Virus record (IMG/VR): IMGVR_UViG_3300046005_000547
Location: 170,736-234,735 of that record
Reading direction: 5' to 3' (one strand)
Length of the DNA stretch: 64,000 nt
Shown: one piece after another, positions 19,397 to 56,136 of the stretch
How positions within the stretch are numbered: position 1 is the first letter of the stretch
Layout: each line of letters opens with the position of its first letter
The notes under the pieces: model-generated
Told to the model about the DNA's origin: nothing
Seen by the model: the letters and a program-made list of their open reading frames with translations, nothing else
The model's database searches: none
Translations under genes and position numbers: made by a program

Positions 19397-19942
19397 TTAT
19401 TTTTCCGAAAGAATTGAATTGATAAAATCTAAGATTTTAGATTGTTCTTCTTTTGTCTCATTTTTGAATTCTGTGATATATTCAGCTAATGAAAAATTGT
19501 TTTGGATATTTGAGATTTTCGTTTCTCTACCGTTCAAGAATTGGTCAGATTGATTAGATCCTCTATCCGCATATCGTTGTTTCAACAAATCTTGTTTACA
19601 TTTTAAGACAACGATATGAAATTCAATATCAGGTTGTTCTGACATCAATTCATATAGATTCATATTTGTTAATCTATCACCTTCCATCAAAATGTTTGAT
19701 TCTGTGACCTTGAACCATTTAACAAATTCTGGTTGAACAGCCAGACTCAACTTATCTGTTCCAGGAAACGTCTCACCTTCATCATATTTCCCTAAGATAT
19801 ACAAATCTAAATCTTTAGAGTATTCAGAATCCACTAATTTGGCAGGTTGTGTTCTTTCCCAAGTGGACGATTTCATGAATTCTCTGAACAGAGTAGATTT
19901 ACCAGTTCCTGGAACCCCACATACAGCAATAACTTTTCTCAT
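19397..19942 (-). CDS. P-loop kinase, 5-hydroxymethyluracil-DNA-kinase-like
   Basis: [17 protein letters not shown] Walker A; ILGKY...FPGTDKLS..VQP; LMEGDRL; TAATG overlap with upstream aGPT-Pplase gene. Confidence 0.75.
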   Translation of the reverse strand: MRKVIAVCGVPGTGKSTLFREFMKSSTWERTQPAKLVDSEYSKDLDLYILGKYDEGETFPGTDKLSLAVQPEFVKWFKVTESNILMEGDRLTNMNLYELMSEQPDIEFHIVVLKCKQDLLKQRYADRGSNQSDQFLNGRETKISNIQNNFSLAEYITEFKNETKEEQSKILDFINSILSEK

Positions 19943-20859
19943 TATATTTTCTCGCAATCTAATTCTGTTATATTCATGTCAATCAATTTTAATCTATTAC
20001 TCAATAGATTATCAACTGAACCTTTCAATTTCTCTGCTATCAGAGAATCATTATTATACTCTAATGCAGCTCTTAATTTAAGAACTTTATCACCTTTGTT
20101 TAATGTCCCTTTAAATGTCTTCCTATAATCGCAAAAGAATGTCTCAATTTCAGTGACGCCAATACATCTATTTGGATTATGAGGACATTTATATTCTTTG
20201 AAGAATTCCAATTCCGATAAGAACAATTCATCTAACAGAGGATCTTGTCTAATCTGTTCCGATGAACGTTTGGAGATAGACGATCCTGTTCTAACCAATT
20301 CAAATCCCGATAATGAACCCTTTGGTATAGTCTTCTTGAAATCATCCGACCAGACTGGTTTGTAATTCATGTCAAATATAGATTCAACCATATCAGCAAC
20401 TTTGAACGCAAAGTATTCACCAAACGTAGGAATCATCTTAGCGGATTCAAGTGATGTCTTCCAATCAACAGTATGTTCTAATACATTATCAATCCATTGT
20501 TCAGGAGTTTTAATCCTCATTTTATCTATCTGAGTGTTATAACTTCTTGATTTAACATTTGTTTCTCTTGAAGCTACATCAATTCTGTCTTTACCAACTT
20601 TTGCTTCCTTGAACAACATTCTCACATAATCATAGTATTCATCGTCTGGTATAGAACATAATTTAATGGAATGTTTTAAATCATATACCATTAGATTAGA
20701 GAAGATTAACCGTTTCTTCTCAGTGTCCGATAATTCAGAATTTCTAATCATTGTATAGATGGGATCCACTTCACCCAGAGCAATATGTTGAAATGAAAAC
20801 TTCCTGAATTCATCTAATAATATATAGACATCATCAAATAGATTATTCATTGGATTCAC
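19942..20859 (-). CDS. aGPT-Pplase / amino-acid:DNA transferase (HhH glycosylase-like fold)
   Basis: GEVDPIY; [12 protein letters not shown]; [11 protein letters not shown]; adjacent to kinase. Confidence 0.7.
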
Positions 20860-23446: not shown

Positions 23447-24172
23447 ATGAAAGCATTATCTATTGGTATCAACAAATACAACGTAGCACCTCTGAGAGGT
23501 TGTATAACAGATTCTAATGATTTAACAACAGAATTGATTGAAAGGGGATTTGATGTATCGAGGTTGTTAGACGAACAAGCAACCAAATCAAACATTATTG
23601 AAAAGATGCATCAATTATTGTCTGAATCCAAAACAAAATTCATTTTACATTATTCTGGACACGGTTCACAGATCCCATGTTCAAATGGTTCGGAAGAAGA
23701 TGGATTGACTGAAATCCTATGTCCATTCGATTTAATCAATTCAGACGGTTCATGGACATCCAATTATATCACAGATGATGAAATACAACAATTGTTCTCA
23801 GAGTTTCCTGATATTCATATAGAAGTTATTCTTGATTGTTGCCATTCAGGAACCGCAACTAGAGATATTAAACCAACATCCATTACTCCTAGATTCATAC
23901 AATCTCCTGTTATAAATTCATCTAAGAATATTCCATTCGGAGTATCTAATGATAATGTAATCTGTTGGAGCGGATGCACCGATAATCAGACGGCAGCTGA
24001 CTCGTTCATCGACGGGAAATACAGGGGAGCATTTACCACAGCATTTTTGACTGCTTCTGGTAACAGAGAAATAATGTTTAAGAATATTACGGATTACATG
24101 ATTAAGAATGGATATGAACAACGACCAGTCTTAACTTGTACAGATAAACAAAGGACAGAATCAATGTTCTAA
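23447..24172 (+). CDS. Metacaspase / caspase-family (C14) peptidase
   Basis: ALSIGINKY..LRGCITD; HYSGHGSQ (His); ILDCCHSGT (Cys); GAFT; AGGAG RBS and TTAAATA upstream. Confidence 0.93.
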   Translation: MKALSIGINKYNVAPLRGCITDSNDLTTELIERGFDVSRLLDEQATKSNIIEKMHQLLSESKTKFILHYSGHGSQIPCSNGSEEDGLTEILCPFDLINSDGSWTSNYITDDEIQQLFSEFPDIHIEVILDCCHSGTATRDIKPTSITPRFIQSPVINSSKNIPFGVSNDNVICWSGCTDNQTAADSFIDGKYRGAFTTAFLTASGNREIMFKNITDYMIKNGYEQRPVLTCTDKQRTESMF

Positions 24173-26666: not shown

Positions 26667-27335
26667 TTATTTGTTTTGTTCAATAAGTTCCAACAAATTA
26701 TTGTAAGATTGACCACTATATGTTTGGAATGTCAATCTATGTTCAGTTTTGTAATCTTCAGAAGTCAATAAATCAACACCAGCTTGAGCAATTTCTCTTG
26801 GAACAATCAATGATTCGCCATTTTCAAACACGGTTTTAATAGTTGATTCCGAATCAATAGATTTATACAACTGGATTAAAATGTTTGAGAATTTTTGTTC
26901 TTCTTCGTCTTCCTCAACAATTTCGGTATCAATGATTTCTTCTTCAATATCGTCATCACCTTCTCTGTTGGTTTCATCAACCAAATCTTTCAAAATTTGA
27001 ATACCTTTTTGAAATTGAACTTGTTTAACATCAACAGTTTTTACGTCAGTTGGTTTTTTAACGGTGGTTCTTAATCTAGAACCATTAATAATGTCAGTCA
27101 AATCAACAACGATTTCAGGCAATTTGTACATTCCAACATCAGCACGATTATCTTTGAACCATTGATTTGCGCATTTAGGTGGTGAAGTTCTCCCCAACAA
27201 ATAGTTTGTTTCAAGAACCATTGGTTTAGTGATGAAAGGAACTTCTTTAGTTGAATTGTCCCAAACATAACGCAAGATTGAAGTGTATAATTCAACTGTG
27301 TTTCTTCTTTCAGTTTTGTTTTCAACGTTTGACAT
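26667..27335 (-). CDS. Hypothetical protein, paralog family (with acidic linker)
   Basis: QWFKDN...MYKLP; FENGES; YNNLL. Confidence 0.7.
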   Translation of the reverse strand: MSNVENKTERRNTVELYTSILRYVWDNSTKEVPFITKPMVLETNYLLGRTSPPKCANQWFKDNRADVGMYKLPEIVVDLTDIINGSRLRTTVKKPTDVKTVDVKQVQFQKGIQILKDLVDETNREGDDDIEEEIIDTEIVEEDEEEQKFSNILIQLYKSIDSESTIKTVFENGESLIVPREIAQAGVDLLTSEDYKTEHRLTFQTYSGQSYNNLLELIEQNK

Positions 27336-27431: not shown

Positions 27432-28637
27432 CTATAACTCGTACAAAGAAATATTTTTATCTTCGTTACCCGTAAATTTTAACATATTTCTAGGATTATA
27501 TTTTGTTTCGAATTCTATTCTTTCTTTTTCGTCAAACCATTCATTATAATGGGAAACGCACAATTTTCCTCCAATTGATTTTTCTAAATTAAACCCCATT
27601 ATTTCTCTGGAGTTTGGTTCGTCTTTGTAATAAGTGTGGGTGTCAAAATTCAATCCTTTATCATATAATGCACTAGAATATTCTTTTTTTGTTTTTGCGA
27701 ATTCTTTCGCAAATTTACCTTTCGTATTCATAGCGATTACGAAAGGTTTAAAATTTATTTCACCTTCCCAAGAATAATATAATTTATCGTATAATTCTGC
27801 GATTTTATTGGTATTTACGTACAATTGGTAGAATAAAGGATTATGTTTTATCGTTTTTCTTAATTGACATAAACAAGTTTCTAAATTATAAATATCGATA
27901 TGGATTATAGAATTATCGTTACAATAATGATATATTTCTTTAACCTTTTCTTCGAAAAATAATAATCTATTTATGTCCGTATTTTTTGTTTTTTTAATTA
28001 TTTGCCATTCTTCTTTATTTAAAACCCAACAAAGAGCATTCCATTGCGACCAACTATTTTGGTTTTCCAACTGTAATTCCGGTATATCTATATCATAATC
28101 GAAAAACTCATACATCATTTGTTTCGTTAACCAAACCCCCATTCTACCGTATCCATGTAAACTTTGTAATTCTTCGGTTAAATTATTGAAATTAGTTATA
28201 GGATTTCCAGTTTTGGTTAATTTTTCAAAATGTTCGATTATGTCAATGTTTTCGTATCGTTCTTTTAAATCTTTAAATAATCCGACAAAATTCCTATAAC
28301 ATTTCAAAGTATCAGTCGCGTAGAAACATCTTTTCGAATTATTTTCAACGAATTCGTTTATTTCTTCTACAGAAGTTTCTAAAAAATTAGGAAACTTCTG
28401 TAGAATTATCATTGGCCAATGACTCCGATAAGATTGACCAAAAATTAAGCAATAAAAAAGTTTTTGTTTATCTGTTAAATTCATTTCGGAAGCGATAACT
28501 TTACCATGGTGCCAATGATCTATATCTCCTTCTAACATTAAAACGTTTGTATACCTTCTAAACAATTCCATTCTATTTTCAGGTAATCTCCAATCTTTAT
28601 AATTCGATTCTTCTAATTCATAATCAAATAAACTCAT
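27432..28637 (-). CDS. Second aGPT-Pplase / amino-acid:DNA transferase
   Basis: DWRLPENRMELF; EGDIDH; LHGYGRMGVWL; NLETCLCQLRK; immediately downstream of a TET/JBP gene. Confidence 0.7.
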   Translation of the reverse strand: MSLFDYELEESNYKDWRLPENRMELFRRYTNVLMLEGDIDHWHHGKVIASEMNLTDKQKLFYCLIFGQSYRSHWPMIILQKFPNFLETSVEEINEFVENNSKRCFYATDTLKCYRNFVGLFKDLKERYENIDIIEHFEKLTKTGNPITNFNNLTEELQSLHGYGRMGVWLTKQMMYEFFDYDIDIPELQLENQNSWSQWNALCWVLNKEEWQIIKKTKNTDINRLLFFEEKVKEIYHYCNDNSIIHIDIYNLETCLCQLRKTIKHNPLFYQLYVNTNKIAELYDKLYYSWEGEINFKPFVIAMNTKGKFAKEFAKTKKEYSSALYDKGLNFDTHTYYKDEPNSREIMGFNLEKSIGGKLCVSHYNEWFDEKERIEFETKYNPRNMLKFTGNEDKNISLYEL

Positions 28638-28767
28638 TATTTTTTTCCTTTATCTTATTTGGTTTAATCTTCATTTAGAAATCTATTTAATAATATATTT
28701 GCGTTCGCTGTTATATCTCCAGTAAAACGAAAAATGGAGAAACCCGTTAAGGTCTCTCCAATCTTAT

Positions 28768-30138
28768 TTAAAAGAATTCATCCAATGATGTAGATTCAAA
28801 TTCATCTTTAAGGTCTTGATGATATTCATCAATCCATTGTTGCCCTTTCTCATGTTCTAATAAGAAATCGTACCATTCTTTCGATGTCCACATTTTTTGG
28901 AAAACGCCGTTCCAAAGTGGGCGCCATAATGGATGCGTCTCATCTTTACGTCTGGTGTCAACAAACAAACGTCTATAATCTTCATATTCCTTTGAACCCA
29001 GACCCAACATGTCTTCTCTGAAATAAGCAATAACAGAAATACGTTCACCACCTTCTTCGGTTTGAATGAATTCAGTGTTTCCATGTAAAATTTCATGATT
29101 ATTGATTAAACATAAATCTCTTGGTCTAATGTTAACTGCAATTCTATATGCAGGAAACACTAGATAACAACCTTCATAATTCTCATTTTTAGATAACACC
29201 AATAGATTTGAGAACCCTGATGTCAAATCACCGGCATCAAAATGATAATGCGTACGAAACGATTTATTTACAGTCACTGTTGTAAATACGGTTTCGGGAA
29301 TCAAAAATGCTGGATCCATTTTGTCGGCAGCTGCTCTCTGGTTACCCCATCTCCAAGGTAATAATTCCTTGAATCCTCCATTCAAACGTTTGAAAAATGG
29401 AAATGATAATTTGAATTTATCAAAATGATGGTCGGTGTATCCGGTTGCTCTACCATAAGGGATTCGTGGGTATCTTGAATACCATCCAGCAATACCAGAA
29501 TATGCTGGAGCAGCATAAACTGTATTAGACACCCAATTTTTCATTACAAATAATGCTCGTTCTTTGGCATCTTCTTGGTCCATGGATTCTAATTCTGAAA
29601 CCAATTCATCAAATTTAAAATTGTCTGGAGTTTTATTAGTCAACCATACAGAAGTTCTTAAACCGTTGTTAGATGAATTATCTTGTTGTTTGAGTTGTTC
29701 TAATGGATCCGAACCGTCTAATGTACTTGTTCTATCAATAAAGTATTCTAAAATATCATGTTGACGTTTAGTGAATCGTTCGCGTCGTTCATTATCTGTT
29801 ATTTCTTCTAACATACCAGCAGCAAGTCCGCGATTGTTAGATAATACAGCAGCATCTCTTAATCCGCCGTACGCTCCATCGTGTTCTTCAATAGTGAAAA
29901 ATCCTTTACGATATTTAAATGCGATACGCCGTTCATCAGAACCTTTATCGCATGAATTACATTCAGATACACAAGTTGCTTTGGTTGATAAATCGCATAA
30001 TGGTTCCATGTATACATCAACGTCTTCGTCGATATCTCCCCCAGGTCCAATTAAAATATCATAATGAGATCTATCTGCACCATGACCCAATAGGTGGTCT
30101 ACGTTATGTTTTTCTTTTGCTACAATAATTCTTGCCAT
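28768..30138 (-). CDS. TET/JBP-family 2OG-Fe(II) dioxygenase, paralog A
   Basis: PETVFTTVTVNKSFRTHYHFDAGD (HxD); ILHGNT; ERISVIAYFRE; YPRIPYGRAT. Confidence 0.9.
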   Translation of the reverse strand: MARIIVAKEKHNVDHLLGHGADRSHYDILIGPGGDIDEDVDVYMEPLCDLSTKATCVSECNSCDKGSDERRIAFKYRKGFFTIEEHDGAYGGLRDAAVLSNNRGLAAGMLEEITDNERRERFTKRQHDILEYFIDRTSTLDGSDPLEQLKQQDNSSNNGLRTSVWLTNKTPDNFKFDELVSELESMDQEDAKERALFVMKNWVSNTVYAAPAYSGIAGWYSRYPRIPYGRATGYTDHHFDKFKLSFPFFKRLNGGFKELLPWRWGNQRAAADKMDPAFLIPETVFTTVTVNKSFRTHYHFDAGDLTSGFSNLLVLSKNENYEGCYLVFPAYRIAVNIRPRDLCLINNHEILHGNTEFIQTEEGGERISVIAYFREDMLGLGSKEYEDYRRLFVDTRRKDETHPLWRPLWNGVFQKMWTSKEWYDFLLEHEKGQQWIDEYHQDLKDEFESTSLDEFF

Positions 30139-30318
30139 ATGTTTGCCCTTTTGTTTAAAATTACATTATACTCTATAATGTTTAAAATAGAAATCTTCTT
30201 AATACATTACATATAATACACAAATCTAATGGAGTTCAGAATAATATCTGAACTCCATGTTTATCACCAACTAATTGTCCATGTATAATTTACAGTGGAA
30301 TGTCATTTTCGATATTCA

Positions 30319-31047
30319 TTATTGTTTCCGTTTAATCAAAGTTTGTTTCCAATCAATTTCACCAGACTGGATAGCGTCATACAATTTATCGTCTAAAGAT
30401 ATTGATTCGTATGAATTATCATTGATACCTTCACCCCACATTTCTGTTTCATCTCTGTCTTCCATAATAGGTTTAAATCTGTAGAACATTCCCTCTGGTA
30501 TTAAATTGATACCAACCAAATCAATAGAAAAATACTGCATATCTTCGGAACAATTCTTATTCCATACGTTACCAGTAATGAAATCATTGTATGTGATGAC
30601 ATCTTTATTTACATTAGTTCTGAAAATAATAGTTGAATAATTATATAATTCGTTCCCAATATCAAAGAATGTTTTAATATACTCGTATTGACCGTTTCTA
30701 CCATTATCCCAATATCTTTCTTTGCGCGTTGGTGCCGTTTCAAATTCAAACAATTCGCCGTCTTCATCCATGGCAGCACAAACTGCCCAATCGTTTTTGA
30801 ATTCATAATTTAACAATCCAGGATAAATTGGTTTATCGATTGTTCCGTTGTAATGATTTACAAAATCTCTAATATCAGTATCAGAATATCCATTATCATT
30901 CAAACAATTATGAATTTCTTCAAATAATTCAATACGTTCTAATTCTTCTTTAATCAAATTTACAGGAACATTAACTTGTTGATTGGTTGATGTATCTTTC
31001 ATGTTTAAAATGTAATCCGATTGTTTGGTTGTGTTAATAATAATCAT
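30319..31047 (-). CDS. Hypothetical protein
   Basis: Long ORF with AGGAG RBS. Confidence 0.7.
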   Translation of the reverse strand: MIIINTTKQSDYILNMKDTSTNQQVNVPVNLIKEELERIELFEEIHNCLNDNGYSDTDIRDFVNHYNGTIDKPIYPGLLNYEFKNDWAVCAAMDEDGELFEFETAPTRKERYWDNGRNGQYEYIKTFFDIGNELYNYSTIIFRTNVNKDVITYNDFITGNVWNKNCSEDMQYFSIDLVGINLIPEGMFYRFKPIMEDRDETEMWGEGINDNSYESISLDDKLYDAIQSGEIDWKQTLIKRKQ

Positions 31048-31059
31048 TTGGTTCTCCTG

Positions 31060-31596
31060 TTATTTTGTTGGGTCTAAATTCATTGATGCTTTACTTCTTT
31101 TGATGGCTTGTTCTCTGGTTGGATACGCTAATCCATTTTCAATATAAAACAATGATGAATGTTCATACTTCAACGTCGTATAAAAATTAGGATTCATGTT
31201 TGCTATATAGAAAATAGACCCTTCTCTAAATCCATCTCTTTGACCGTCTTCAACAAACCAACCATTTACGTTTATTTTTGGTAATTCTTTAATTCTTCTG
31301 TATTTTACTGTTCCTGATCGATGGTCATGAAAATCGGGGTGTTCTGTACAATTAACGTATCCAAATTGTGTTAATTTTTGCCATTTTTCATATGGTGTTG
31401 AATTATGTTTCCAATCTTCTGAATATGCATCAATCATAATGTTAATATCTCTACAATCGGAGAATTCCGTTACAATACAATTATCTCGATACATTCTATT
31501 ACATTTCCCGCATTTAAATTCATTTTGGTATCTAGAATCAACGCCCTTTTTAGATATAATACCATAACAATCTTCACAATGTAATTCATCTTGCAT
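31060..31596 (-). CDS. Hypothetical protein; N-terminal Cys pairs, C-terminal domain shared with 41065-41556
   Basis: CEDC..CGKC; INVNGWFVEDG...GLAYPTREQAIKRSKASMNLDP. Confidence 0.7.
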   Translation of the reverse strand: MQDELHCEDCYGIISKKGVDSRYQNEFKCGKCNRMYRDNCIVTEFSDCRDINIMIDAYSEDWKHNSTPYEKWQKLTQFGYVNCTEHPDFHDHRSGTVKYRRIKELPKINVNGWFVEDGQRDGFREGSIFYIANMNPNFYTTLKYEHSSLFYIENGLAYPTREQAIKRSKASMNLDPTK

Positions 31597-31626
31597 TTCT
31601 TATACTCTTAAAATTAACATATTTCT

Positions 31627-31654
31627 ATTATACTTTATAAAACGAAATAAGAAA
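31627..31654 (-). promoter_or_regulatory. Early-type promoter
   Basis: TTTCTT-N16-TATAAT. Confidence 0.55.
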
Positions 31655-31659
31655 GAATC

Positions 31660-32577
31660 TTATGTAATAAAAGTATGGTTTGTTGATTTAATATGTCTAG
31701 TTACATGGGATAGACTGTTTGTTTTAAATGAACAATCTTTACAATAATGCATTACATCAGGCGTTCTATTTGGATTTCTATCAGGATTTTGTTTACAATT
31801 ATCATTATGATATTTTGTTATAATCGTTTTATTTTCAGATTCAAATCCACAAACATTACAAAAATGTTTCTTTACGTTTCTATCTGGATTCTGTTTACAA
31901 TTATCTCCATGGTATCTAACATAATTACCTTTATTAGAATACACAAATTCTTCAGAACAATGAATACAAACAAATTTCGGTTCAATCGTGTCTAAGAATG
32001 ATTTGGTTTCCAACATTTTCTTGTTCATTCTATCTCGTTCTTCAGATGACATATTAACATGCCATTCTGTAACAAGTTCAGATCTTAAATCTTTTATGTA
32101 ACTTTGACTGATTCTAATTTTCTCACTAATTGCATTTTGTTCTTCTTGCGTTCGTTTGGAAATAGTGTCAGCAATTTGATTCTTAATCCTTAATTTTTCT
32201 TCTTCTGATTTGGATTTTAAATTTTTAGAATGTTCTATATTTTTGAAAATAGACAATTCAGAATATTGTCTACTTGTGATTCCTTTTTGGTATACTCTAC
32301 ACAATTTATGTAAAGTAGGAAACGATTTCTTTAATATCCAATGGGCAACATAATGTTGACGTTTTGTTAAAATTATTCTATTCCAAGGAAATAATGTAAA
32401 ACATTCAAATTCAGGAAACATATCACTACCTCTAGGTAAAATATGATGTTTGTCTGTATGTTTCATCTTAGGGTGATTCTTTCCTTGTAAAGATGTAATA
32501 AATTTTATGTATCTATTCAGATAATGTATATTGTGCGGTTTGGTGTGTAAATGTTCTATAAATGTATTGTTGTTCAT
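31660..32577 (-). CDS. HNH homing endonuclease with C-terminal zinc-finger repeats
   Basis: KHHILPRG...NRIILTKRQHYVAHWIL; two CxxC...YH.DNCKQNPDRN repeats. Confidence 0.85.
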   Translation of the reverse strand: MNNNTFIEHLHTKPHNIHYLNRYIKFITSLQGKNHPKMKHTDKHHILPRGSDMFPEFECFTLFPWNRIILTKRQHYVAHWILKKSFPTLHKLCRVYQKGITSRQYSELSIFKNIEHSKNLKSKSEEEKLRIKNQIADTISKRTQEEQNAISEKIRISQSYIKDLRSELVTEWHVNMSSEERDRMNKKMLETKSFLDTIEPKFVCIHCSEEFVYSNKGNYVRYHGDNCKQNPDRNVKKHFCNVCGFESENKTIITKYHNDNCKQNPDRNPNRTPDVMHYCKDCSFKTNSLSHVTRHIKSTNHTFIT

Positions 32578-32633
32578 GTTTAGTAATAATTGAAAAATGG
32601 AGATAGAATTGACCTATCTCCATGTGTATATTA

Positions 32634-33995
32634 TTATCCCATTAGATCTTCTAATGAAACTGATTCGAATTTGTCTTTTAAATCTTGATGATATTCATCT
32701 AACCATTGTTGTCCTTTATCGTGAATCAATAAGAAATCATACCATTCTTTTGAGTCAAACATATGAGGATAAACCCCATTAAAGAATTCATGCCATTTTG
32801 GATTTGTTTTATCATGTTTAGAATTTTCAACAAATTGTTTTCTATGGTCTTCATATTCTTTAGAACCACATTCTAACAATCCATGTCTAAAATATGAGAT
32901 GACGCTTACTCTATGTGCATCTGGTTCATTTTTGATAATTTTTGTATTACCATGCATGATTTTACTATTATCGACAATTAACAAATCTCCTGGTCTTACA
33001 TTAACAGCAATTCTATATTCAGGGAATACTAGATACCCACCAGAGTAATTATCATTGTTAGATAATACCAACAAATTAGAAATAGCATCCTGTAAATTGG
33101 CTGCATCGAAGTGGCAACCCGTAACCCACGTGTTATTTACAGTTAGAGTGGTGAACACTGTTTCGGGAATCAAAAATGCTGGATCGATTTTATCTGTGGC
33201 ATCTTTTTGTAATTGCCATCTTCTTGGCATTAAATCTCTGAATCCTCGATTTAATGACTGGATAAATGGGTAACATTTTTTAAATTTATCAAAATGATGG
33301 TCTGTATAAGCAGTAGCTCTACCATAAGGTTGACGAGGATATCTACTCCACCACCCACAAACTCCACTCATGGCAGGAACCGCCATTGACGTTCCAGATA
33401 CATGTTTCTTATGGATTCGGATAGCTTCTGCTTGAGCATCTTCTCTACTCATCTTTGATAATGAATCCACCCATGATTCAAAATCAAACATTTCCTCACC
33501 ATACAGAACCCAGACGACACCCTTTGTTACAGTGGTATCATCTTTACGTTTCCGTAATTCAGATAATGTATCGTCATCATATAATGAATCTAACGGATTC
33601 ATGAAGTAATCAAAGATTGAACGTTGGTAATCAGATACATAATTACGTTTGGCATCTTTGTTGTTCGATTTATCGCGTTCTGTATATTTACCAGCAGCAG
33701 TTCCTCTATTGTTTGAAATAGTGGCAGCATCTTTCAATCCTTCTAATGCCATGTCTTGTTCTTCTTTTGTGAAGAAGTTCTTACGAAACTTGAACGCAAC
33801 TCTGAATTCATCAATACCTTTATCGCATGAATGACATTCAGATACACAATCAAGTTTTGTTGATAGGTCACAGACTGGTGGAGTATAAACGTCCGCATCT
33901 GATTCAATTAAAACATCATAAAATGAATCATCAATGAATGTTCCCAGTAAATGTTCACAATCAAGTTTTTCTTTTGCTACAATAATTTGAACCAT
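32634..33995 (-). CDS. TET/JBP-family 2OG-Fe(II) dioxygenase, paralog B
   Basis: PETVFTTLTVNNTWVTGCHFDAAN; IMHGNT; HRVSVISYFRH. Confidence 0.9.
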   Translation of the reverse strand: MVQIIVAKEKLDCEHLLGTFIDDSFYDVLIESDADVYTPPVCDLSTKLDCVSECHSCDKGIDEFRVAFKFRKNFFTKEEQDMALEGLKDAATISNNRGTAAGKYTERDKSNNKDAKRNYVSDYQRSIFDYFMNPLDSLYDDDTLSELRKRKDDTTVTKGVVWVLYGEEMFDFESWVDSLSKMSREDAQAEAIRIHKKHVSGTSMAVPAMSGVCGWWSRYPRQPYGRATAYTDHHFDKFKKCYPFIQSLNRGFRDLMPRRWQLQKDATDKIDPAFLIPETVFTTLTVNNTWVTGCHFDAANLQDAISNLLVLSNNDNYSGGYLVFPEYRIAVNVRPGDLLIVDNSKIMHGNTKIIKNEPDAHRVSVISYFRHGLLECGSKEYEDHRKQFVENSKHDKTNPKWHEFFNGVYPHMFDSKEWYDFLLIHDKGQQWLDEYHQDLKDKFESVSLEDLMG

Positions 33996-34022: not shown

Positions 34023-34400
34023 TTAAAGAATTTTGAATTTAGACATTTGAATGTTTCTTAGTTGTTGAACATTTTGATTTACAACTACATCAACTGTTGA
34101 ATATCTATCGGAAGTAGAAACTAATTGTTCTGTTTCGGATAATTTAGAATTCATTGAATATAATAATTCAGTTTCTTCATATTTGTTCCAAATCTTGGAT
34201 ACAACATTTTCATTTAATGTTGCTTCAATACAATAACCAGTTACATTACATCTGAATCTTAAATTTGGATCCGTAATAGATTTGTTGAAGTATCCACAAT
34301 TTTTACATTGTTCTTTAATGGATAAATGTTCAACGTATCTCATACAGGTTGGAGCCACTGAATTAGTGGCTGTGATAATTTTATATCTAAATGATTTCAT
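34023..34400 (-). CDS. Hypothetical Cys-containing protein
   Basis: Coupled to helicase stop; CKNC...CNVTGYC. Confidence 0.6.
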   Translation of the reverse strand: MKSFRYKIITATNSVAPTCMRYVEHLSIKEQCKNCGYFNKSITDPNLRFRCNVTGYCIEATLNENVVSKIWNKYEETELLYSMNSKLSETEQLVSTSDRYSTVDVVVNQNVQQLRNIQMSKFKIL

Positions 34401-35800
34401 TAGAATACAAAGTCCGATGTTGATACTTGTTTTGTTTTAGTTAAAGATGGCATTGGATTATCCTTAAATGGAGTGTAATCTGTTGAACCCTTGCCAGAGA
34501 TATTTGCTTGAGCAGAATCTTCTAAATCAAACAATCGCATTTTAGAACGGTCAATACCAACAGTGAATCTTCTATGATTATCCAAAGAATTGTAACGATT
34601 CTTCAATTGTTTAATCATTAGTTGTTGCATACCTTCTAGTTCTTCAGTTGAAATGAGACCTAAGAATAAATCACAAGTTGCTGGTAACCCAAACGATTCA
34701 CTGGTATTGGTTAAATCCATATCCGTTGAATTTGCGGCGTCCCTCGTACTCTGAGTAGCTGAGATAATAGGAACTTCATATTCAACAGCCAATCCTCTGA
34801 ATTCCTCGGCAATTGATTTGACATAAGAATATGAATTAACACTGTTACCGAATTTTAATTTCTGAGAAGCGCAGATGTTAAGATAATCGATGATAATCAT
34901 ATCTGGTTTGAAATTCTTTTTTAATTTCAATTCTTCAAGTAACGCTCTGAAATGACCAACATGAGCAGAACTGGTTGGGTATTCTTTAATAATCAATTTA
35001 CCAATAGATTTATCCATTAATCGTTTGATTCTGGTTTCGAACAAGGATTTATCCATTGTTTCTAATTCAGCAATGTTGACATTCAATAGATTAGCGTCGA
35101 TACGTTCGGCAATCTTTTCTTCTGACATCTCAGCTGTAATATACAGGACGTTCTTACCTTGCGCAATAGTTGAAGCAGCAATATGACACATAACAAGAGA
35201 TTTACCAACGCCTGTGGATGCCAATAATACATTTAACGTCTTCTTACTTAGACCACCCTTTGTAATGTTATTCAATAATTCAATATCAAATGGAATCTTA
35301 TCTTCTTTTAGATGATACAAATCAAAACGAGATTCCCAATCATCAATATATGAATGTCCAATATTGGTATCAAACGATACAGCCAATGCGTCCGATAAAA
35401 TGCTTGGTAATGCGTCTTTTGTTACATTCTGAACTTTACCATCAATCACCTTAATAGAATGCATAATGGCATTATATAAAGCTCTGTCTTGACAATACCG
35501 TTCGGTTTCCTGGATTAACCATTCAATGTTGATATTCTTATCAGAATATGAATTGACTAGATTTTCAATATCCTTTAATTCATCTTCCTTAACGTCCGTT
35601 CTGTTAGAGGATTCAATTTGTATAATTTGTTTTGTTGGTAGAGTATTGTATTTGGAAAAATACGTATCTATTTGTTGTAGGATAATCTGTTCAGAACGTT
35701 CTTGGAAATAATCTAATTTTAAAAATGGCAAGACCTTCCGACAATACTCATCTGAATGGATTAAGTTTTCTAGGATTACATTTTCTATTCTATCGCTCAT
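34400..35800 (-). CDS. 41: T4 gp41-like replicative helicase
   Basis: LASTGVGKS Walker A; YITAEMSEEKIAERID; IIIDYLN; ISATQ; KQLKNRY. Confidence 0.97.
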   Translation of the reverse strand: MSDRIENVILENLIHSDEYCRKVLPFLKLDYFQERSEQIILQQIDTYFSKYNTLPTKQIIQIESSNRTDVKEDELKDIENLVNSYSDKNINIEWLIQETERYCQDRALYNAIMHSIKVIDGKVQNVTKDALPSILSDALAVSFDTNIGHSYIDDWESRFDLYHLKEDKIPFDIELLNNITKGGLSKKTLNVLLASTGVGKSLVMCHIAASTIAQGKNVLYITAEMSEEKIAERIDANLLNVNIAELETMDKSLFETRIKRLMDKSIGKLIIKEYPTSSAHVGHFRALLEELKLKKNFKPDMIIIDYLNICASQKLKFGNSVNSYSYVKSIAEEFRGLAVEYEVPIISATQSTRDAANSTDMDLTNTSESFGLPATCDLFLGLISTEELEGMQQLMIKQLKNRYNSLDNHRRFTVGIDRSKMRLFDLEDSAQANISGKGSTDYTPFKDNPMPSLTKTKQVSTSDFVF

Positions 35801-38187: not shown

Positions 38188-38667
38188 TTATCTATCGTTA
38201 TTTAAAATCGAATCATTACAATTCCCTTTAATTGAACCATTCACTGTTGAACATTTACCACCAATAGAACCTCCGACTTTAACGTTTCCATTGGTCGTTT
38301 TTACGTTACCAGCGACATTCTTTTCAATCTTAACGGATCCATTCGTGGTTTCGACTTCACCAACATCTCCAGTAACAAATACGTTTTCGCATACGTCTAC
38401 TTGTAATGATTCGATATTACCATTAATTGTGATGTTAATTGTTTTCTCATCATCAGAATTCACCAATTTGTCATTAACATACACTTTATTGTTTACAACT
38501 CGAACGTTTCTACCACCAGCATATTGTTTATCGTTTACAATAATACTACCAGCAACGTTATCTGTATCTTTTGAATTCCAAAATGCCATTTTATTTCTCC
38601 ATCTTCTTGAAAATGGTATCACAAATCTTAGGAACTTGTTCTCCTGCCTTACCTTCAAAGAATTCAA
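38188..38667 (-). CDS. Beta-helix repeat protein (DUF4097/adhesin-like)
   Basis: Repeats GDVGEVETTNGSV / GNVKTTNGNV / GKCSTVNGSI. Confidence 0.6.
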   Translation of the reverse strand: MNSLKVRQENKFLRFVIPFSRRWRNKMAFWNSKDTDNVAGSIIVNDKQYAGGRNVRVVNNKVYVNDKLVNSDDEKTINITINGNIESLQVDVCENVFVTGDVGEVETTNGSVKIEKNVAGNVKTTNGNVKVGGSIGGKCSTVNGSIKGNCNDSILNNDR

Positions 38668-39280
38668 ATTCAGCCCACATTGTTGATGGTTTAACTAAAT
38701 CCACCAATAAAATTTTACAGTCTGAACCGACGGCATCCAATAATGACGCAGCAGGATAAACTGATAACGACGTTCCAACCACAACCATGTAATCATAATG
38801 TTCTTCTTTAATCATTGCATATGCAGTTTCAAACATCGGAACATCTTCATAGAAGAATACAATATGTGGTCTTAATTGATTACCTTGTTCAGATAATGTT
38901 CCCACAAACATATCATCAGTCCAATCATATGTAAATCCTGTTACGGTATCTCTTGCTTTAAGTAATTCGCCATGTAGATGGATAACTTTGCTGGAACCTG
39001 CTCGTTCATGTAAATTATCAACATTGGTTGTGATGACTGTTACATCATGATATTGTTCCAATTCCTTGATAGCAATATGTGCTGCATTAGGTTCAACAGT
39101 CTGAACTTCTTTGCGTCTCATGTTATAAAATTCATGAACCAATTCAGGAGTTTCGGCTAATGCCTTTGGTGTACAAACATCTTCAATGTTGTAGTTGTTC
39201 CATAATCCATCTGAATTTCTAAATGTACTCAGACCAGATTCAGCTGATATACCAGCACCCGTTAAAAATAATATCTTCAT
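38591..39280 (-). CDS. Sir2/CobB NAD-dependent deacylase
   Basis: TGAGISAESGLSTFR, TNVDNLHERAGS, HLHGEL, LRPHIVFF, VGTSLSVYPAA. Confidence 0.93.
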   Translation of the reverse strand: MKILFLTGAGISAESGLSTFRNSDGLWNNYNIEDVCTPKALAETPELVHEFYNMRRKEVQTVEPNAAHIAIKELEQYHDVTVITTNVDNLHERAGSSKVIHLHGELLKARDTVTGFTYDWTDDMFVGTLSEQGNQLRPHIVFFYEDVPMFETAYAMIKEEHYDYMVVVGTSLSVYPAASLLDAVGSDCKILLVDLVKPSTMWAEFEFFEGKAGEQVPKICDTIFKKMEK

Positions 39281-46100: not shown

Positions 46101-46430
46101 ATGCATATAACAAGTAAGCCGATAAACGATTTATATAATCATTATAAGAATTCAGCAGCGTCCCGATCTATCCCATTTACATTAACCAAATTGGATTTCC
46201 ACGAATTGTCCTTTCCATTGACATGCCCTATTTTGGGTATGCCGTTGAGATTTAATACAGGAAGAACGATGTCAGATGATTCTTATTCATTGGACAGGAT
46301 AGATTCAAGTTTGGGATATACAAAGGAGAATTGTATAGTGATATCAAATAGAGCAAATATCTTGAAGAGAGATGCTACATTGGATGAACTTCAGAAATTG
46401 TGTAAATTTTATACAGAGTTGTTGAATTAG
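46101..46430 (+). CDS. His-Me finger (HNH/EndoVII-like) endonuclease
   Basis: CPILG...SLDRIDSSLGYTKENCIVISNRANILK. Confidence 0.8.
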   Translation: MHITSKPINDLYNHYKNSAASRSIPFTLTKLDFHELSFPLTCPILGMPLRFNTGRTMSDDSYSLDRIDSSLGYTKENCIVISNRANILKRDATLDELQKLCKFYTELLN

Positions 46431-47221
46431 GTTTTAAAGATGGTTAATCCAAAGATTGTGGAAGTTGAATCTTCATCGTCTAATATGGATTTTAGGTCAA
46501 CAACATCTTTGATTAAGGAATTCAGGGTGGTACCAGAAGCGATAAGGTCATCTAGGACTAATACAGTGGAGTTCCTTAGTTTGCCAATTTTGGGATCGTC
46601 TTTTAATTTGTAGAAGTTTTGGAGGAATTTGGTGTCGCGTTTATTGAAGTCTTTCATTTGGAAAGAGTCTTTATCATTTGCTCGTTTTAGACCATATTCT
46701 AGCGACCTGATGATGCTGGGAGAAATCTTAGGATGATTTTTGTCTATTTCAATTTTAGAGATTTCATTTTTGACATATAATTTTGGGACAAACGAGATAT
46801 GCGGATTCCTTGATTTCAATTCAACAATTAGGTCATCTAGGATGGAGGATGTTGAATCAGGAGTGATGATTACATCTACCAGCTGATGGTCATTAGATTT
46901 GGTTAAGATTTTGTACGAGATATAGATTGCGGTTCTCCTGATGAAATTTGTATAATCATCAGGAGATAGATTTTGTTGTTTCTTTAATTGTTTGATTACA
47001 GAAGTGACATCCACATATTCATCTTTTGTGGTCTTGTAGATAGAATAAATTGGAACGCCATTTACATTGGAACCTTTTGATACATACGGGTCGAACGATT
47101 TAGTCTTACCAAATTTAGTGGATATGCCTTGTTTGTCGGAGTAGTTGAATTGTAGACCAGAGTCAGTTTGTTTGATTGCTTCTAGCAATTCATTGTATTC
47201 TTTAAAAGATAGCATTCTCAT
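46427..47221 (-). CDS. Type I phosphoribosyltransferase-fold (ComF-like) protein with capsid-targeting-like N-terminus
   Basis: MLSFKEYNELLE/A; VLVLDDLIASGTTL PRPP-binding loop; IITPDST. Confidence 0.75.
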   Translation of the reverse strand: MRMLSFKEYNELLEAIKQTDSGLQFNYSDKQGISTKFGKTKSFDPYVSKGSNVNGVPIYSIYKTTKDEYVDVTSVIKQLKKQQNLSPDDYTNFIRRTAIYISYKILTKSNDHQLVDVIITPDSTSSILDDLIVELKSRNPHISFVPKLYVKNEISKIEIDKNHPKISPSIIRSLEYGLKRANDKDSFQMKDFNKRDTKFLQNFYKLKDDPKIGKLRNSTVLVLDDLIASGTTLNSLIKDVVDLKSILDDEDSTSTIFGLTIFKT

Positions 47222-47549
47222 TCCATATGAATAGTTGTTTGTTTTGTTTTTTAGCATGGTCTATTGAATTCTTTGTACCTTTAGATACGCCGTCCCAGAT
47301 GGCAATGACGCAATCTGAATCATCAATGATTTGTTTATTTCTGACAAATCCAGCACCTCTGCCATATTTCTTCCAATCTGGTTTATAGATTGTGGTGGGA
47401 ATGTTATGTTCATTGGCATATTGTTCTGCCATGGAATCAATACCATTTGCCCCACCAGAAACAATATGAGATATTTCATATTGTTTTAATATATTTACAA
47501 CATATTCATAATCTGTGATGTTTCTTGAACCAACAACTGCGAATTTCAT
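47202..47549 (-). CDS. SLOG-superfamily (YspA/DUF2493-like) protein
   Basis: AVVGSRN, IVSGGANGIDSMA, AGFVRNKQI, AIWDGVSKGT. Confidence 0.88.
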   Translation of the reverse strand: MKFAVVGSRNITDYEYVVNILKQYEISHIVSGGANGIDSMAEQYANEHNIPTTIYKPDWKKYGRGAGFVRNKQIIDDSDCVIAIWDGVSKGTKNSIDHAKKQNKQLFIWNENAIF

Positions 47550-55429: not shown

Positions 55430-55489
55430 AAAGTTCATTGGATTCTTCCAACTTGAACTCTATTATAATGATTTTTATTTACATCGAAA
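55430..55489 (-). promoter_or_regulatory. Early promoter plus stem-loop leader identical to 27365-27402
   Basis: TTTCGA-N16-TATAAT at 55462-55489; 38-bp identity. Confidence 0.8.
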
Positions 55490-56136
55490 GAACTTTCTAA
55501 AGATTTAATATAAAAATTAATGTCGTGTGAATTTTTAATAAATTTACCAGTCAATCTATCTTTGATTATGTCCATTATATTACAGTCTTGAACGATATTC
55601 CCTTTGGAATTTATATACATTAAAATCCCATGATGTCTATAAGGATAAATCGGAGTCATGGGAGCATAATCATACGCAGCAGCAAATCTATAATGTGTTG
55701 ATTTAACGTTATCCACAAATTCTTTATTACCAATTCTAGGGGATCCAAAAGAATATATGACACAATCATCTCTGTCGATTAAATGTGAAAAGATAACTGC
55801 GATTGCACCACCCAATGAATGTCCAGTCAAATATAATTTTTTATTTTTGTCTAATCTATCACCCAATGATTCCAATAACAATTCAGAATATCTCAAGAAT
55901 CCACTTTGAATCCCTTTTTTCAATGTAAATGATATATCAGCAATCCAATCTTCTGGTTCGTCAGTGCCTCTGAATACAATTATTTGTTCAGTTTCTGATT
56001 CCAATAAGAATGCTTGCGCAAAACAATTTGAAAATAATTCAACAGAATACCCTTGTACAGTTATTGAATCGTTGTATGATTGTTTAGATAGATTAGCGAA
56101 GAATAATGCTTCATATAGAATCATAAATCTGTCCAT
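55435..56136 (-). CDS. Class 3 lipase (alpha/beta hydrolase)
   Basis: IVFRGTD, LTGHSLGGAIA nucleophile elbow, SFGSPRIGN, HDI..Y. Confidence 0.9.
   Translation of the reverse strand: MDRFMILYEALFFANLSKQSYNDSITVQGYSVELFSNCFAQAFLLESETEQIIVFRGTDEPEDWIADISFTLKKGIQSGFLRYSELLLESLGDRLDKNKKLYLTGHSLGGAIAVIFSHLIDRDDCVIYSFGSPRIGNKEFVDNVKSTHYRFAAAYDYAPMTPIYPYRHHGILMYINSKGNIVQDCNIMDIIKDRLTGKFIKNSHDINFYIKSLESSFDVNKNHYNRVQVGRIQ

What the first reader, a model, noticed from the sequence alone, without database searches (positions are those of the whole stretch)
28768..33995. TET/JBP paralog pair with diverged active-site neighbours and a shared four-Cys insert
Seen: both have C-x6-C-x3-C-x2-C (CDLSTKATCVSECNSC / CDLSTKLDCVSECHSC) near the N-terminus. 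The metal ligands are intact but the context differs (RTHYHFDAGD vs VTGCHFDAAN; YPRIPY vs YPRQPY). They flank two hypothetical genes and an HNH endonuclease. Inference: sub-functionalisation (different base, sequence context or oxidation step). The Cys cluster may bind Zn or Fe-S, reminiscent of the Cys-rich region of metazoan TETs.
Basis: partly seen in the sequence, partly recalled or inferred. Interest (0 to 1): 0.6.

Follow-up and report, generated by a model that had tools for sequence, protein, structure and literature searches.

The report
Two diverged phage TET/JBP dioxygenase paralogs
A lake-water T4-like phage carries two old copies of a DNA-base-oxidising enzyme, both kept under selection, beside thymine-hypermodification genes. 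The enzyme kind and pathway are already known, but a diverged pair, with one copy changed at a base-contacting residue, is uncommon and easy to test at the bench.

Summary
Two TET/JBP genes lie at 28768-30138 and 32634-33995 (both minus strand; 456 and 453 aa; 53% identical). Both keep the Fe(II)/2-oxoglutarate residues and a four-Cys loop, and three genes separate them, one of them a homing endonuclease.

The Cys loop does not distinguish the pair. It is a feature of a very large family of about 450-aa phage TETs.

The genes belong to a known kind of module, the post-replicative thymidine-hypermodification cluster: gp41 helicase, TET, (GATase), amino-acid:DNA transferase, P-loop kinase. Here there are two transferases and one kinase.

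The pair is rare. I found it only in this phage, a 249-kb sister phage and one other contig. It derives from a tandem duplication, and both copies are under purifying selection.

Both copies depart from family-invariant positions. TET-B departs most, including Asp to Asn at the position aligned with human TET2 N1387, a known determinant of 5mC versus T preference.

Divided labour by sequence context or base is therefore plausible but unproven. A resemblance to the metazoan TET Cys-rich domain is not supported.

The parts
28768..30138 (-). TET-A, a 456-aa long-form TET/JBP (5mYOX) dioxygenase. It keeps the family's JBP-like Asp304 pocket residue, and A297 is replaced by His.
   Evidence: Pfam Tet_JBP 73.4 bits. 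AF2 model pLDDT 86.4; human TET2 Z 21.0, rmsd 3.5 over 261 residues. Motif positions.
32634..33995 (-). TET-B, a 453-aa paralog. The catalytic set is intact, but 12 family-invariant positions are changed in both B-clade members, including Asp to Asn at residue 300.
   Evidence: Pfam Tet_JBP 57.8 bits. AF2 pLDDT 85.8; TET2 Z 19.0. Substitution table.
29950..29997 (-). Four-Cys loop of TET-A (C48, C56, C60, C63).
   Evidence: The model's pLDDT is only 66-81 here.
33825..33872 (-). Four-Cys loop of TET-B (C42, C50, C54, C57).
29227..29244 (-). H-x-D-x-x-D motif of TET-A (H299, D301, D304).
   Evidence: alignment to TET2 H1382/D1384/N1387.
33096..33113 (-). H-x-D-x-x-N motif of TET-B (H295, D297, N300).
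27432..28637 (-). Amino-acid:DNA transferase 1 (AADT, also called aGPT-Pplase), 401 aa, directly downstream of TET-A.
   Evidence: Pfam ADDT 37.1 bits against a cut-off of 26.2. Homolog 1.7 kb downstream of the Cr30 TET, and in ViI-like phages.
19942..20859 (-). Second, divergent AADT-like gene, 305 aa.
   Evidence: Pfam ADDT 24.2 bits, just under the cut-off. tblastn hit to Delftia phage PhiW-14 gene 109, E 1e-7.
19397..19957 (-). P-loop nucleotide kinase, 186 aa, overlapping the end of AADT-2. It is the candidate 5hmU-DNA kinase.
   Evidence: Pfam Ploopntkinase3 29.8 bits against a cut-off of 27. Homologs sit next to the AADT in the canonical clusters.
31660..32577 (-). Free-standing homing endonuclease, 305 aa, inserted between the paralogs.
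   Evidence: phrog_655, E 1.4e-16. Absent from the sister phage.
30319..31596 (-). Two ORFs of unknown function (242 and 178 aa) between the paralogs. They are probably inserted cargo and not core parts.
   Evidence: No Pfam hit. The 242-aa homolog is in three pieces in the sister phage, and the two TETs directly abut in the P0004 contig.
34400..35800 (-). gp41/DnaB-type replicative helicase, the conserved upstream anchor of the TET cluster.
   Evidence: the helicase lies next to the TET in 46 of 83 loci.
34023..34400 (-). 125-aa ORF between the helicase and TET-B, conserved in the sister phage; function unknown.
26667..27335 (-). 222-aa ORF downstream of AADT-1, 70% identical in the sister phage; function unknown.
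28735..28760 (-). Terminator-like hairpin plus T-run directly after TET-A.
32597..32623 (-). Terminator-like hairpin plus T-run directly after TET-B, with a stem similar to the one after TET-A.

Best explanation
The two genes are tandem-duplicate, both-functional members of a large family of about 450-aa phage TET/JBP (5-methylpyrimidine) dioxygenases. In T4-like phages this family sits in a cluster of gp41 helicase, TET, (glutamine amidotransferase), amino-acid:DNA transferase and P-loop kinase.

Inferred mechanism. After replication the dioxygenases use Fe(II), 2-oxoglutarate and O2 to hydroxylate the C5-methyl group of thymine in phage DNA, giving 5hmU. The P-loop kinase phosphorylates the hydroxyl. 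The two AADTs then displace the phosphate with an amino acid or amine, giving hypermodified thymidine that shields the DNA from host nucleases.

The two dioxygenases have diverged most in the helical variable insert (about residues 105-205) and around the active site. They therefore most likely divide the work by target. TET-A keeps the JBP-like Asp pocket. TET-B has a remodelled pocket (Asp to Asn and others) and handles a different sequence context, DNA form or base.

The four-Cys loop is a facultative structural metal site of the whole family, most likely zinc, and is unrelated to the pair's divergence.

Shown here: homology, fold, intact catalytic residues, gene context, duplication history and selection. 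Inferred: substrate, products and division of labour.
For: Family and fold
- Both pass Pfam Tet_JBP.
- AF2 models have pLDDT 86. Residues 1 to about 390 align with human TET2 (Z 21.0 and 19.0), NgTET1 (Z 18.7 and 17.7), CMD1 and CcTet.
- In the profile alignment to TET2, H299/D301/H352 fall on H1382/D1384/H1881, R366 on R1896, Y372 on Y1902, and D304 on N1387.

Context
- AADT-1 is adjacent, and AADT-2 plus a P-loop kinase lie 7.5 kb downstream.
- Across 83 related loci the TET neighbours are GATase in 48, AADT in 46, helicase in 46 and kinase in 29 (examples).
- The genome has ThyX but no ThyA-type hydroxymethylase, so 5hmU would have to be made on DNA.
- This cluster type has been described, and phage T-dioxygenases with differing sequence preferences (YTY versus NTR, each reaching only about 25-35% of T) have been shown experimentally (PMC8989533, PMC13229309).

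Pair
- The A clade, the B clade and two relatives (one single-copy, one from another tandem pair) form one clade (SH-aLRT 98). The B stem is long, at 0.55.
- The same pair in the same order occurs in a 249-kb sister phage. A directly abutting TET-TET-AADT-kinase occurs in another contig.
- dN/dS against the sister phage is 0.22 for A, 0.12 for B and 0.10 for the helicase.
- Of 152 columns at least 97% invariant in 113 single-copy members, A deviates at 22 and B at 35. The median for a mainstream member is 0 and the maximum 11.
- B-only changes include D304N, G303A/S, H348S/A, E349K, E365H and I226Q.
- N1387 of TET2 contacts N4 of 5mC, JBP and NgTET1 carry Asp there, and changing this residue shifts 5mC versus T preference (PMC11804724).
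- A and B are least alike (17-33% identity) in the insert, while the B orthologs are 87-97% identical there.
Against: - No enzyme of this long form has been assayed, as far as I could find. Some ParB-less clade C1 members tested by others showed no activity.
- No GATase and no ParB-like activator was found in this genome, although the proteins carry a C-terminal extension like that of the ParB-dependent enzymes.
- The kinase and AADT-2 are not contiguous with the TETs.
- dS is near saturation (0.9-1.3), so the dN/dS values are rough.
- The TET2 sequence alignment is weak overall (E 0.04). It is trusted only because it is anchored on the metal ligands and agrees with the fold match.
- The effect of Asp versus Asn at this position depends on context. 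NgTET1 D234N raises T oxidation.
Confidence: 0.6

Rival explanations
1. TET-B is a 5mC dioxygenase that evolved from a T-dioxygenase. It oxidises 5mC laid down by the phage's own orphan C5-cytosine methyltransferase, while TET-A continues to act on T. The phage would then modify both pyrimidines after replication.
For: - The B clade alone carries Asn at the position aligned with TET2 N1387. Mammalian 5mC-specific TETs have Asn there, and JBP and the rest of this family have Asp.
- A C5-MTase (Pfam DNA_methylase, 151 bits) is present in both two-TET phages and in none of 5 complete single-TET phages: G002, G003, Cr30, DLP6 and C48C1.
Against: - B keeps Arg370 at the TET2 H1904 position, like the rest of the putative T-acting family.
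- The MTase lies about 54 kb away among nucleotide-metabolism genes. In the characterised phage 5mC systems, MT and TET are adjacent.
- The two two-TET phages are sisters, so the co-occurrence is a single independent contrast and may only reflect larger genomes.
- NgTET1 D234N favours T, not 5mC.
Confidence: 0.2
2. The two enzymes act in sequence. One makes 5hmU and the other oxidises it further to 5fU or 5caU, feeding two different downstream chemistries, one per AADT.
For: - Phage 5mYOX97 oxidises T iteratively to 5caU.
- There are two AADTs but only one kinase here.
- The active-site neighbours of the Fe and 2OG ligands differ in B (H348, E349, E365).
Against: - The residue aligned with TET2 T1372, which governs stepwise oxidation in TET2, is Thr in both copies (T289, invariant).
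- No enzyme known to use 5fU or 5caU was found nearby.
- The greatest divergence is in the insert domain, not in the catalytic centre.
Confidence: 0.1
3. The copies are functionally redundant and kept for dosage or robustness. Their sequence differences are neutral drift.
For: Both keep every catalytic residue and the same predicted fold. Each has its own terminator-like hairpin.
Against: - They are 45% diverged.
- Each clade has its own fixed replacements at positions invariant in more than 100 single-copy relatives.
- TET-B is as constrained as the helicase between the sister phages.
- The pair has survived insertions between the genes in two lineages.
Confidence: 0.07
4. One copy is mainly a non-catalytic partner or activator of the other, as a heterodimer. 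It would stand in for the ParB-like activator that some phage T-dioxygenases need.
For: - No ParB is encoded.
- Both proteins have the C-terminal extension seen in ParB-dependent enzymes, and their C-terminal tails are kept unusually alike.
Against: Both retain all Fe and 2OG ligands under strong purifying selection. Single-copy relatives manage without a second TET.
Confidence: 0.03

Closest known systems
Phage thymine dioxygenases (5mYOX clades C1 and C2; O'Toole et al., PNAS 2026, PMC13229309)
   Same: TET/JBP fold and catalytic set. No adjacent C5-MTase. Clade C1 is linked to AADT, P-loop kinase and GATase genes. Both have a variable insert and, in C1, a C-terminal extension. Action is post-replicative and depends on sequence context.
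   Different: The characterised enzymes are about 290-300 aa, single-copy and either ParB-dependent or stand-alone. These are about 450 aa, with a Cys4 loop, a roughly 100-residue insert and a roughly 65-residue C-terminal extension. They have no ParB and come as a diverged pair. Whether they fall inside clade C1 was not tested, because no reference sequences were at hand.
TET_JBP plus AADT plus kinase thymidine-hypermodification clusters in metaviromes (Lee et al., NAR 2021, PMC8989533)
   Same: A TET_JBP gene replaces dUMP hydroxymethylase next to AADT and kinase genes. T is predicted to be converted to 5hmU on DNA as the entry step.
   Different: That work described single TET genes and did not address paralog pairs or the Cys loop. 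This genome lacks the GATase common in the family.
Trypanosomatid JBP1 and JBP2
   Same: Two paralogous thymidine hydroxylases in one genome with divided roles. Asp sits at the pocket position aligned with TET2 N1387.
   Different: JBP1 and JBP2 differ by fused domains (a J-DNA-binding domain versus a SWI2/SNF2 ATPase). The phage pair has the same architecture and differs by substitutions and the insert.
Human TET2 catalytic domain and Naegleria NgTET1 (solved structures)
   Same: They are the best structural matches (Z 17.4-21.0) over residues 1 to about 390. They share the HxD...H triad, the 2OG arginine and the stacking tyrosine.
   Different: Only 12-16% identity. TET2 has a large multi-zinc Cys-rich domain and a His where the phage family has Arg374. 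The phage Cys loop is a 16-residue insertion.

Membership tests
TET/JBP (5mYOX) Fe(II)/2OG dioxygenases | Pfam PF12851 match above the gathering score | tested here: met
   73.4 and 57.8 bits against a cut-off of 34.9. Also found by the six-frame genome search.
TET/JBP (5mYOX) Fe(II)/2OG dioxygenases | Double-stranded beta-helix fold with TET-type N-terminal elements | tested here: met
   AF2 models (pLDDT 86). hTET2 Z 21.0 and 19.0; NgTET1 Z 18.7 and 17.7. Both stand clearly above the AlkB/FTO rows at Z of about 13.
TET/JBP (5mYOX) Fe(II)/2OG dioxygenases | HxD...H iron triad and 2OG-binding Arg | tested here: met
   A: H299, D301, H352, R366. B: H295, D297, H348, R362. All are invariant in the family alignments.
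TET/JBP (5mYOX) Fe(II)/2OG dioxygenases | Oxidation of a 5-methylpyrimidine in DNA | not testable with these tools
   Needs expression and nucleoside LC-MS.
ParB-dependent phage T-dioxygenases (clade C1 subclass) | Co-encoded ParB-like activator | tested here: not met
   No PF02195 match anywhere in the complete 234.7-kb genome, while the control genomes did match. A very divergent ParB cannot be excluded.
ParB-dependent phage T-dioxygenases (clade C1 subclass) | Linkage to AADT, P-loop kinase and GATase | tested here: inconclusive
   An AADT is adjacent, and the kinase plus a second AADT lie 7.5 kb away. GATase is absent from this genome but present next to the TET in 48 of 83 related loci.
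Phage 5mC dioxygenases (clades A and B of Burke et al. 2021) | Adjacent C5-cytosine methyltransferase | tested here: not met
   The only C5-MTase is about 54 kb away, outside the window.
Metazoan TET Cys-rich domain | A roughly 180-residue Cys/His-rich domain before the DSBH that binds several zinc ions together with core residues | tested here: not met
   There are only four Cys, in a 16-residue loop. The loop is deleted in DLP6, C48C1 and 11 of 84 IMG/VR N-termini with the rest of the protein intact. Residue-level superposition on the TET2 zinc sites could not be done.
Radical-SAM-type CX3CX2C [4Fe-4S] site | Strictly spaced CX3CX2C triad | tested here: not met
   The spacing between Cys2 and Cys3 is 3 in 118 family clusters, 4 in 36 and 5 in 29, out of 184. 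The metal itself cannot be tested here.

The most novel reading that the evidence does not exclude
Inside a phage lineage, a thymine dioxygenase was duplicated and one copy (TET-B) was retuned to 5-methylcytosine. The retuning would come from pocket changes that include Asp to Asn at the TET2-N1387-equivalent position. TET-B would work with an unlinked orphan C5-methyltransferase, so that the phage oxidises, and perhaps hypermodifies, both T and C after replication. This would be a natural, reverse-direction counterpart of the leukaemia TET2 N1387 substrate-shift mutations.
Probability: 0.2. Interest if true: 0.7.

Novelty: new variant of a known kind. Interest (0 to 1): 0.4.

Why it matters
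Phage T-dioxygenases were shown only recently to be sequence-selective, each reaching about a quarter to a third of thymines. A natural pair of diverged paralogs in one genome is a ready-made system for two questions: how these enzymes choose their base and sequence context, and whether phages combine enzymes to widen their coverage of DNA modification.

TET-B carries a natural substitution at the residue that controls 5mC versus T preference in human TET2. Swapping a few residues between A and B could therefore map specificity determinants for enzymes that are also used as epigenomic sequencing tools.

The long-form family is abundant in aquatic T4-like phages: more than 2,000 clusters in the word search, limited to proteins of 0.55-1.75 times the query's length. 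As far as I could find it is uncharacterised, and GenBank mislabels it 'SNF2 DNA repair protein'.

Tried and rejected
- Complex prediction on TET-A plus TET-B gave no verdict (score 0.00, controls not run). It counts neither for nor against binding.
- Megablast of the 9-kb region against GenBank phages found nothing.
- Pfam HMUDK_hel (5hmU DNA kinase helical domain) gave no hit, but the control rang nowhere, so this is uninformative.
- No ParB_N, GATase_6 or ThyA-type thymidylate synthase was found in the genome.
- I tried to fetch the second TET (483 aa) of the P0004 tandem contig. No DNA was served, and the one metagenome scan returned only shorter, more distant relatives. Whether that partner is B-like therefore stays unknown.
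- The atlas search of the 222-aa neighbour gave no usable lead.
- No RNA runs hold the region, so expression was not examined and read laying was not used.
- No claim here rests on an absence of relatives.
- The search for homologous proteins sees only proteins of 0.55-1.75 times the query length, so short-form TETs were not surveyed for the Cys loop.
- I considered and rejected the idea that residues 1-230 are a separate fused domain, such as a ParB-like one. Both models align with TET2, NgTET1 and even AlkB starting from residues 1-40.
- I considered and rejected a radical-SAM-like reading of CX3CX2C, because the spacing varies.

Full report
**What is in the window.** The window is the last 64 kb of a complete 234,735-bp IMG/VR virus record with direct terminal repeats. 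It has about 31% G+C. Runs holding it near-identically come from lake-water metagenomes. T4-type replication genes surround the finding: a gp41/DnaB helicase at 34400-35800, UvsX, RNase H, ribonucleotide reductase and ThyX.

TET-A is 28768-30138 (minus strand, 456 aa) and TET-B is 32634-33995 (minus strand, 453 aa). They are 53% identical from end to end. Both exceed the Pfam Tet_JBP gathering score, and both match phrog_24024 over their full length. Between them lie a 305-aa homing endonuclease (phrog_655) and two ORFs of 178 and 242 aa with no family match.

The quoted Cys strings and active-site contexts are exact, but the spacing is C-x7-C-x3-C-x2-C and not C-x6.

**Fold and catalytic residues.** AlphaFold2 models built from family alignments are confident: pLDDT 86.4 and pTM 0.79 for A, pLDDT 85.8 and pTM 0.78 for B. 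Their best structural matches are as follows.
- Human TET2: Z 21.0, rmsd 3.5 A, 261 residues for A; Z 19.0 for B.
- Naegleria NgTET1: Z 18.7 for A and 17.7 for B.
- CMD1 and CcTet follow, well above the AlkB/FTO rows at Z of about 13.

The alignments start at model residue 1. The N-terminal 100 residues are therefore part of the TET core and not a fused extra domain. Compared with the 290-300-aa phage enzymes studied so far, the extra length comes from three places:
- the Cys loop (residues 44-70);
- a helical insert (about 105-205), which probably corresponds to the 'variable insertion' domain of O'Toole et al.;
- a helical C-terminal extension (about 390-456).

A profile search of the PDB aligns the family to TET2 without gaps across both motifs. 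H299/D301 fall on H1382/D1384, D304 on N1387, H352 on H1881, R366 on R1896, Y372 on Y1902 and R374 on H1904. That alignment is weak overall (E 0.04). I trust it only because it is anchored on the metal ligands and agrees with the fold match. All of these residues except position 304 are the same in A and B.

**The Cys loop belongs to the family, not to the pair.** The word search found 2,041 protein clusters with E below 1e-5, nearly all 444-481 aa, limited to proteins of 0.55-1.75 times the query's length. Of the 184 clusters retrieved with either paralog as query, 183 carry four Cys in this loop. The spacing between the second and third Cys is 3 in 118 clusters, 4 in 36 and 5 in 29.

Among TET N-termini in IMG/VR loci, 73 have the loop. 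The other 11 have it shortened or lack the cysteines, in at least four different forms. The cultured phages DLP6 and C48C1 lack it, while Cr30 has it.

Three features point to a structural metal site, most likely zinc: four invariant Cys, variable spacing, and repeated all-or-none loss in otherwise intact enzymes. They argue against a strictly spaced Fe-S motif. This is inference, and the metal cannot be determined here. It is not a counterpart of the large multi-zinc Cys-rich domain of metazoan TETs.

**Genomic context explains the function.** Directly downstream of TET-A is a 401-aa amino-acid:DNA transferase (Pfam ADDT, 37 bits). A second, weaker AADT-like gene lies at 19942-20859 (24.2 bits). 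It has a hit to gene 109 of phage PhiW-14, a phage cited for thymine hypermodification through a P-loop kinase and AADT. It overlaps a P-loop nucleotide kinase at 19397-19957 (Ploopntkinase3, 29.8 bits).

In related contigs the recurring order is helicase, TET, GATase, (unknown), AADT, kinase. Among 83 loci the TET has a GATase nearby in 48, an AADT in 46, the helicase in 46 and the kinase in 29. Many of these loci are short.

This is the thymidine-hypermodification cluster type described by Lee et al. 2021, in which a TET_JBP gene replaces dUMP hydroxymethylase. O'Toole et al. 2026 linked it to clade C1 T-dioxygenases. The genome has ThyX but no ThyA-type hydroxymethylase. It has no ParB and no GATase.

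The most likely chemistry is therefore T to 5hmU on DNA, then phosphorylation, then amino-acid or amine transfer. All three steps are inferred from homology.

**History of the pair.** In a maximum-likelihood tree, four groups form one clade with SH-aLRT 98: the A clade (the window's TET-A, two metagenomic proteins at 80% and 74% identity, and the sister phage's copy), the B clade (the window's TET-B and the sister's copy at 83%), and two further relatives. The B stem is long, at 0.55 substitutions per site.

One of the two relatives (P0006) is single-copy, in the order helicase, TET, AADT. The other (P0004) is the first gene of a directly abutting run of helicase, TET, TET, AADT, kinase. The 249-kb sister phage has the same order as the window, helicase, small ORF, TET-B, small ORFs, TET-A, then GATase and AADT, but with different intervening genes and no homing endonuclease.

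The pair therefore arose by tandem duplication and was later split by insertions. Among the 80 best IMG/VR loci, only this phage (seen in a second sample) and the sister carry two TETs. The B type has just two clusters in the 5.8-billion-protein collection.

**Both copies are maintained, and both have diverged.** Against the sister phage, dN/dS is about 0.22 for A, 0.12 for B and 0.10 for the helicase. dS is 0.9-1.3, so these values are rough.

Of 152 alignment columns at least 97% invariant in 113 mainstream (single-copy type) members, TET-A departs at 22 and TET-B at 35. The two closest relatives outside the pair (P0006 and P0004) depart at 11 and 15. The median for a mainstream member is 0 and the maximum 11.

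Changes fixed in both B members while all A members keep the family residue include Y208M, W262R, N266L, G303A/S, D304N, G308A/S, H348S/A, E349K, E365H, R396S/N and W409F. I226Q is also fixed in both B members, but one A-clade protein (P0003) shares it. Changes fixed across the A clade include A297 to H/R/Y, W121R, V122F, W179L and I357F.

The paralogs are least alike (17-33% identity per 30-residue window) in the insert. The B orthologs are 87-97% identical there.

**Meaning of D304N.** In human TET2, N1387 hydrogen-bonds N4 of 5mC and H1904 hydrogen-bonds N3. JBP and NgTET1 carry Asp at the N1387 position. Substitutions of N1387 shift TET2 from 5mC towards T (PMC11804724). The family's Asp304 and Arg374 thus resemble the JBP side, and TET-B's Asn is the mammalian-TET state.

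The effect depends on context, however. NgTET1 D234N increases T oxidation, and TET-B keeps the Arg. So TET-B's base pocket has changed at a known specificity position, but the direction of the change cannot be read from sequence.

One further observation keeps the 5mC reading alive. A C5-cytosine methyltransferase is present in both two-TET phages and in none of five complete single-TET phages. The two positives are sisters, so this is a single independent contrast. The gene also lies about 54 kb away, among MazG, PNK and dCMP deaminase genes.

**Verdict.**
- Sub-functionalisation is the best reading of the pair, and comparative data support it. It remains an inference, and sequence context is at least as likely as base identity to be what is divided.
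- The Cys loop is a facultative structural feature of the whole family.
- The enzymes are new, uncharacterised long-form members of a known kind of phage DNA-hypermodification system. The diverged pair is an uncommon variant of that system.

Noticed in passing
window 28735-28760 and 32597-32623 (minus strand): Each TET gene is followed directly by a terminator-like hairpin plus T-run. The two stems are alike (TGGAGA...TCTCCA), so the duplicated unit seems to have included the terminator.
   Followed up: partly
window 28768-28917 vs 32634-32786: Within the 3' ends of TET-A and TET-B, stretches look about 85-90% identical at the DNA level by eye (84% mean over the 150-base alignment, against about 62% for the whole genes). 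Other A-clade proteins lack this B-type tail (HQDLKD). This looks like a short gene-conversion tract, or a shared constraint on the C-terminal extension.
   Followed up: partly
G000:C1:144986-145954 (outside the window): An orphan C5-cytosine DNA methyltransferase sits among MazG, phosphoesterase, polynucleotide kinase and dCMP deaminase genes. It is present in both two-TET phages and in 0 of 5 complete single-TET relatives.
   Followed up: partly
window 23447-24172 (+): A caspase-family peptidase (Peptidase_C14, E 1e-26) lies on the opposite strand to its neighbours.
   Followed up: no
window 38591-39280 (-): A SIR2-family protein (E 3e-40), also conserved in the sister phage.
   Followed up: no
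window 59630-62431 (+): A 933-aa protein with a weak match to the PARP catalytic domain (23.6 bits, under the cut-off), in a plus-strand block near the genome end.
   Followed up: no
window 55435-56136 (-) and 46427-47257 (-): A class-3 lipase-like protein, and a protein with a weak phosphoribosyltransferase motif. Both are unusual accessory genes for a T4-like phage.
   Followed up: no
window 31660-32577 (-): The homing endonuclease carries tandem repeats of a Cys/His motif (about YH-x-DNCKQNPDRN) in its C-terminal half, probably zinc-finger DNA-binding modules. The gene is absent from the sister phage.
   Followed up: no
L016 5330-6279 (sister phage): The homolog of the window's 242-aa ORF is split into three pieces between the two TET genes of the sister phage, suggesting decay of inserted cargo.
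   Followed up: partly
GenBank KF301602.1 59353-60681 and KU682439.2 27179-28525: The TET homologs of phages Cr30 and DLP6 are annotated 'SNF2 DNA repair protein', which looks like a mis-annotation that has been propagated.
   Followed up: partly
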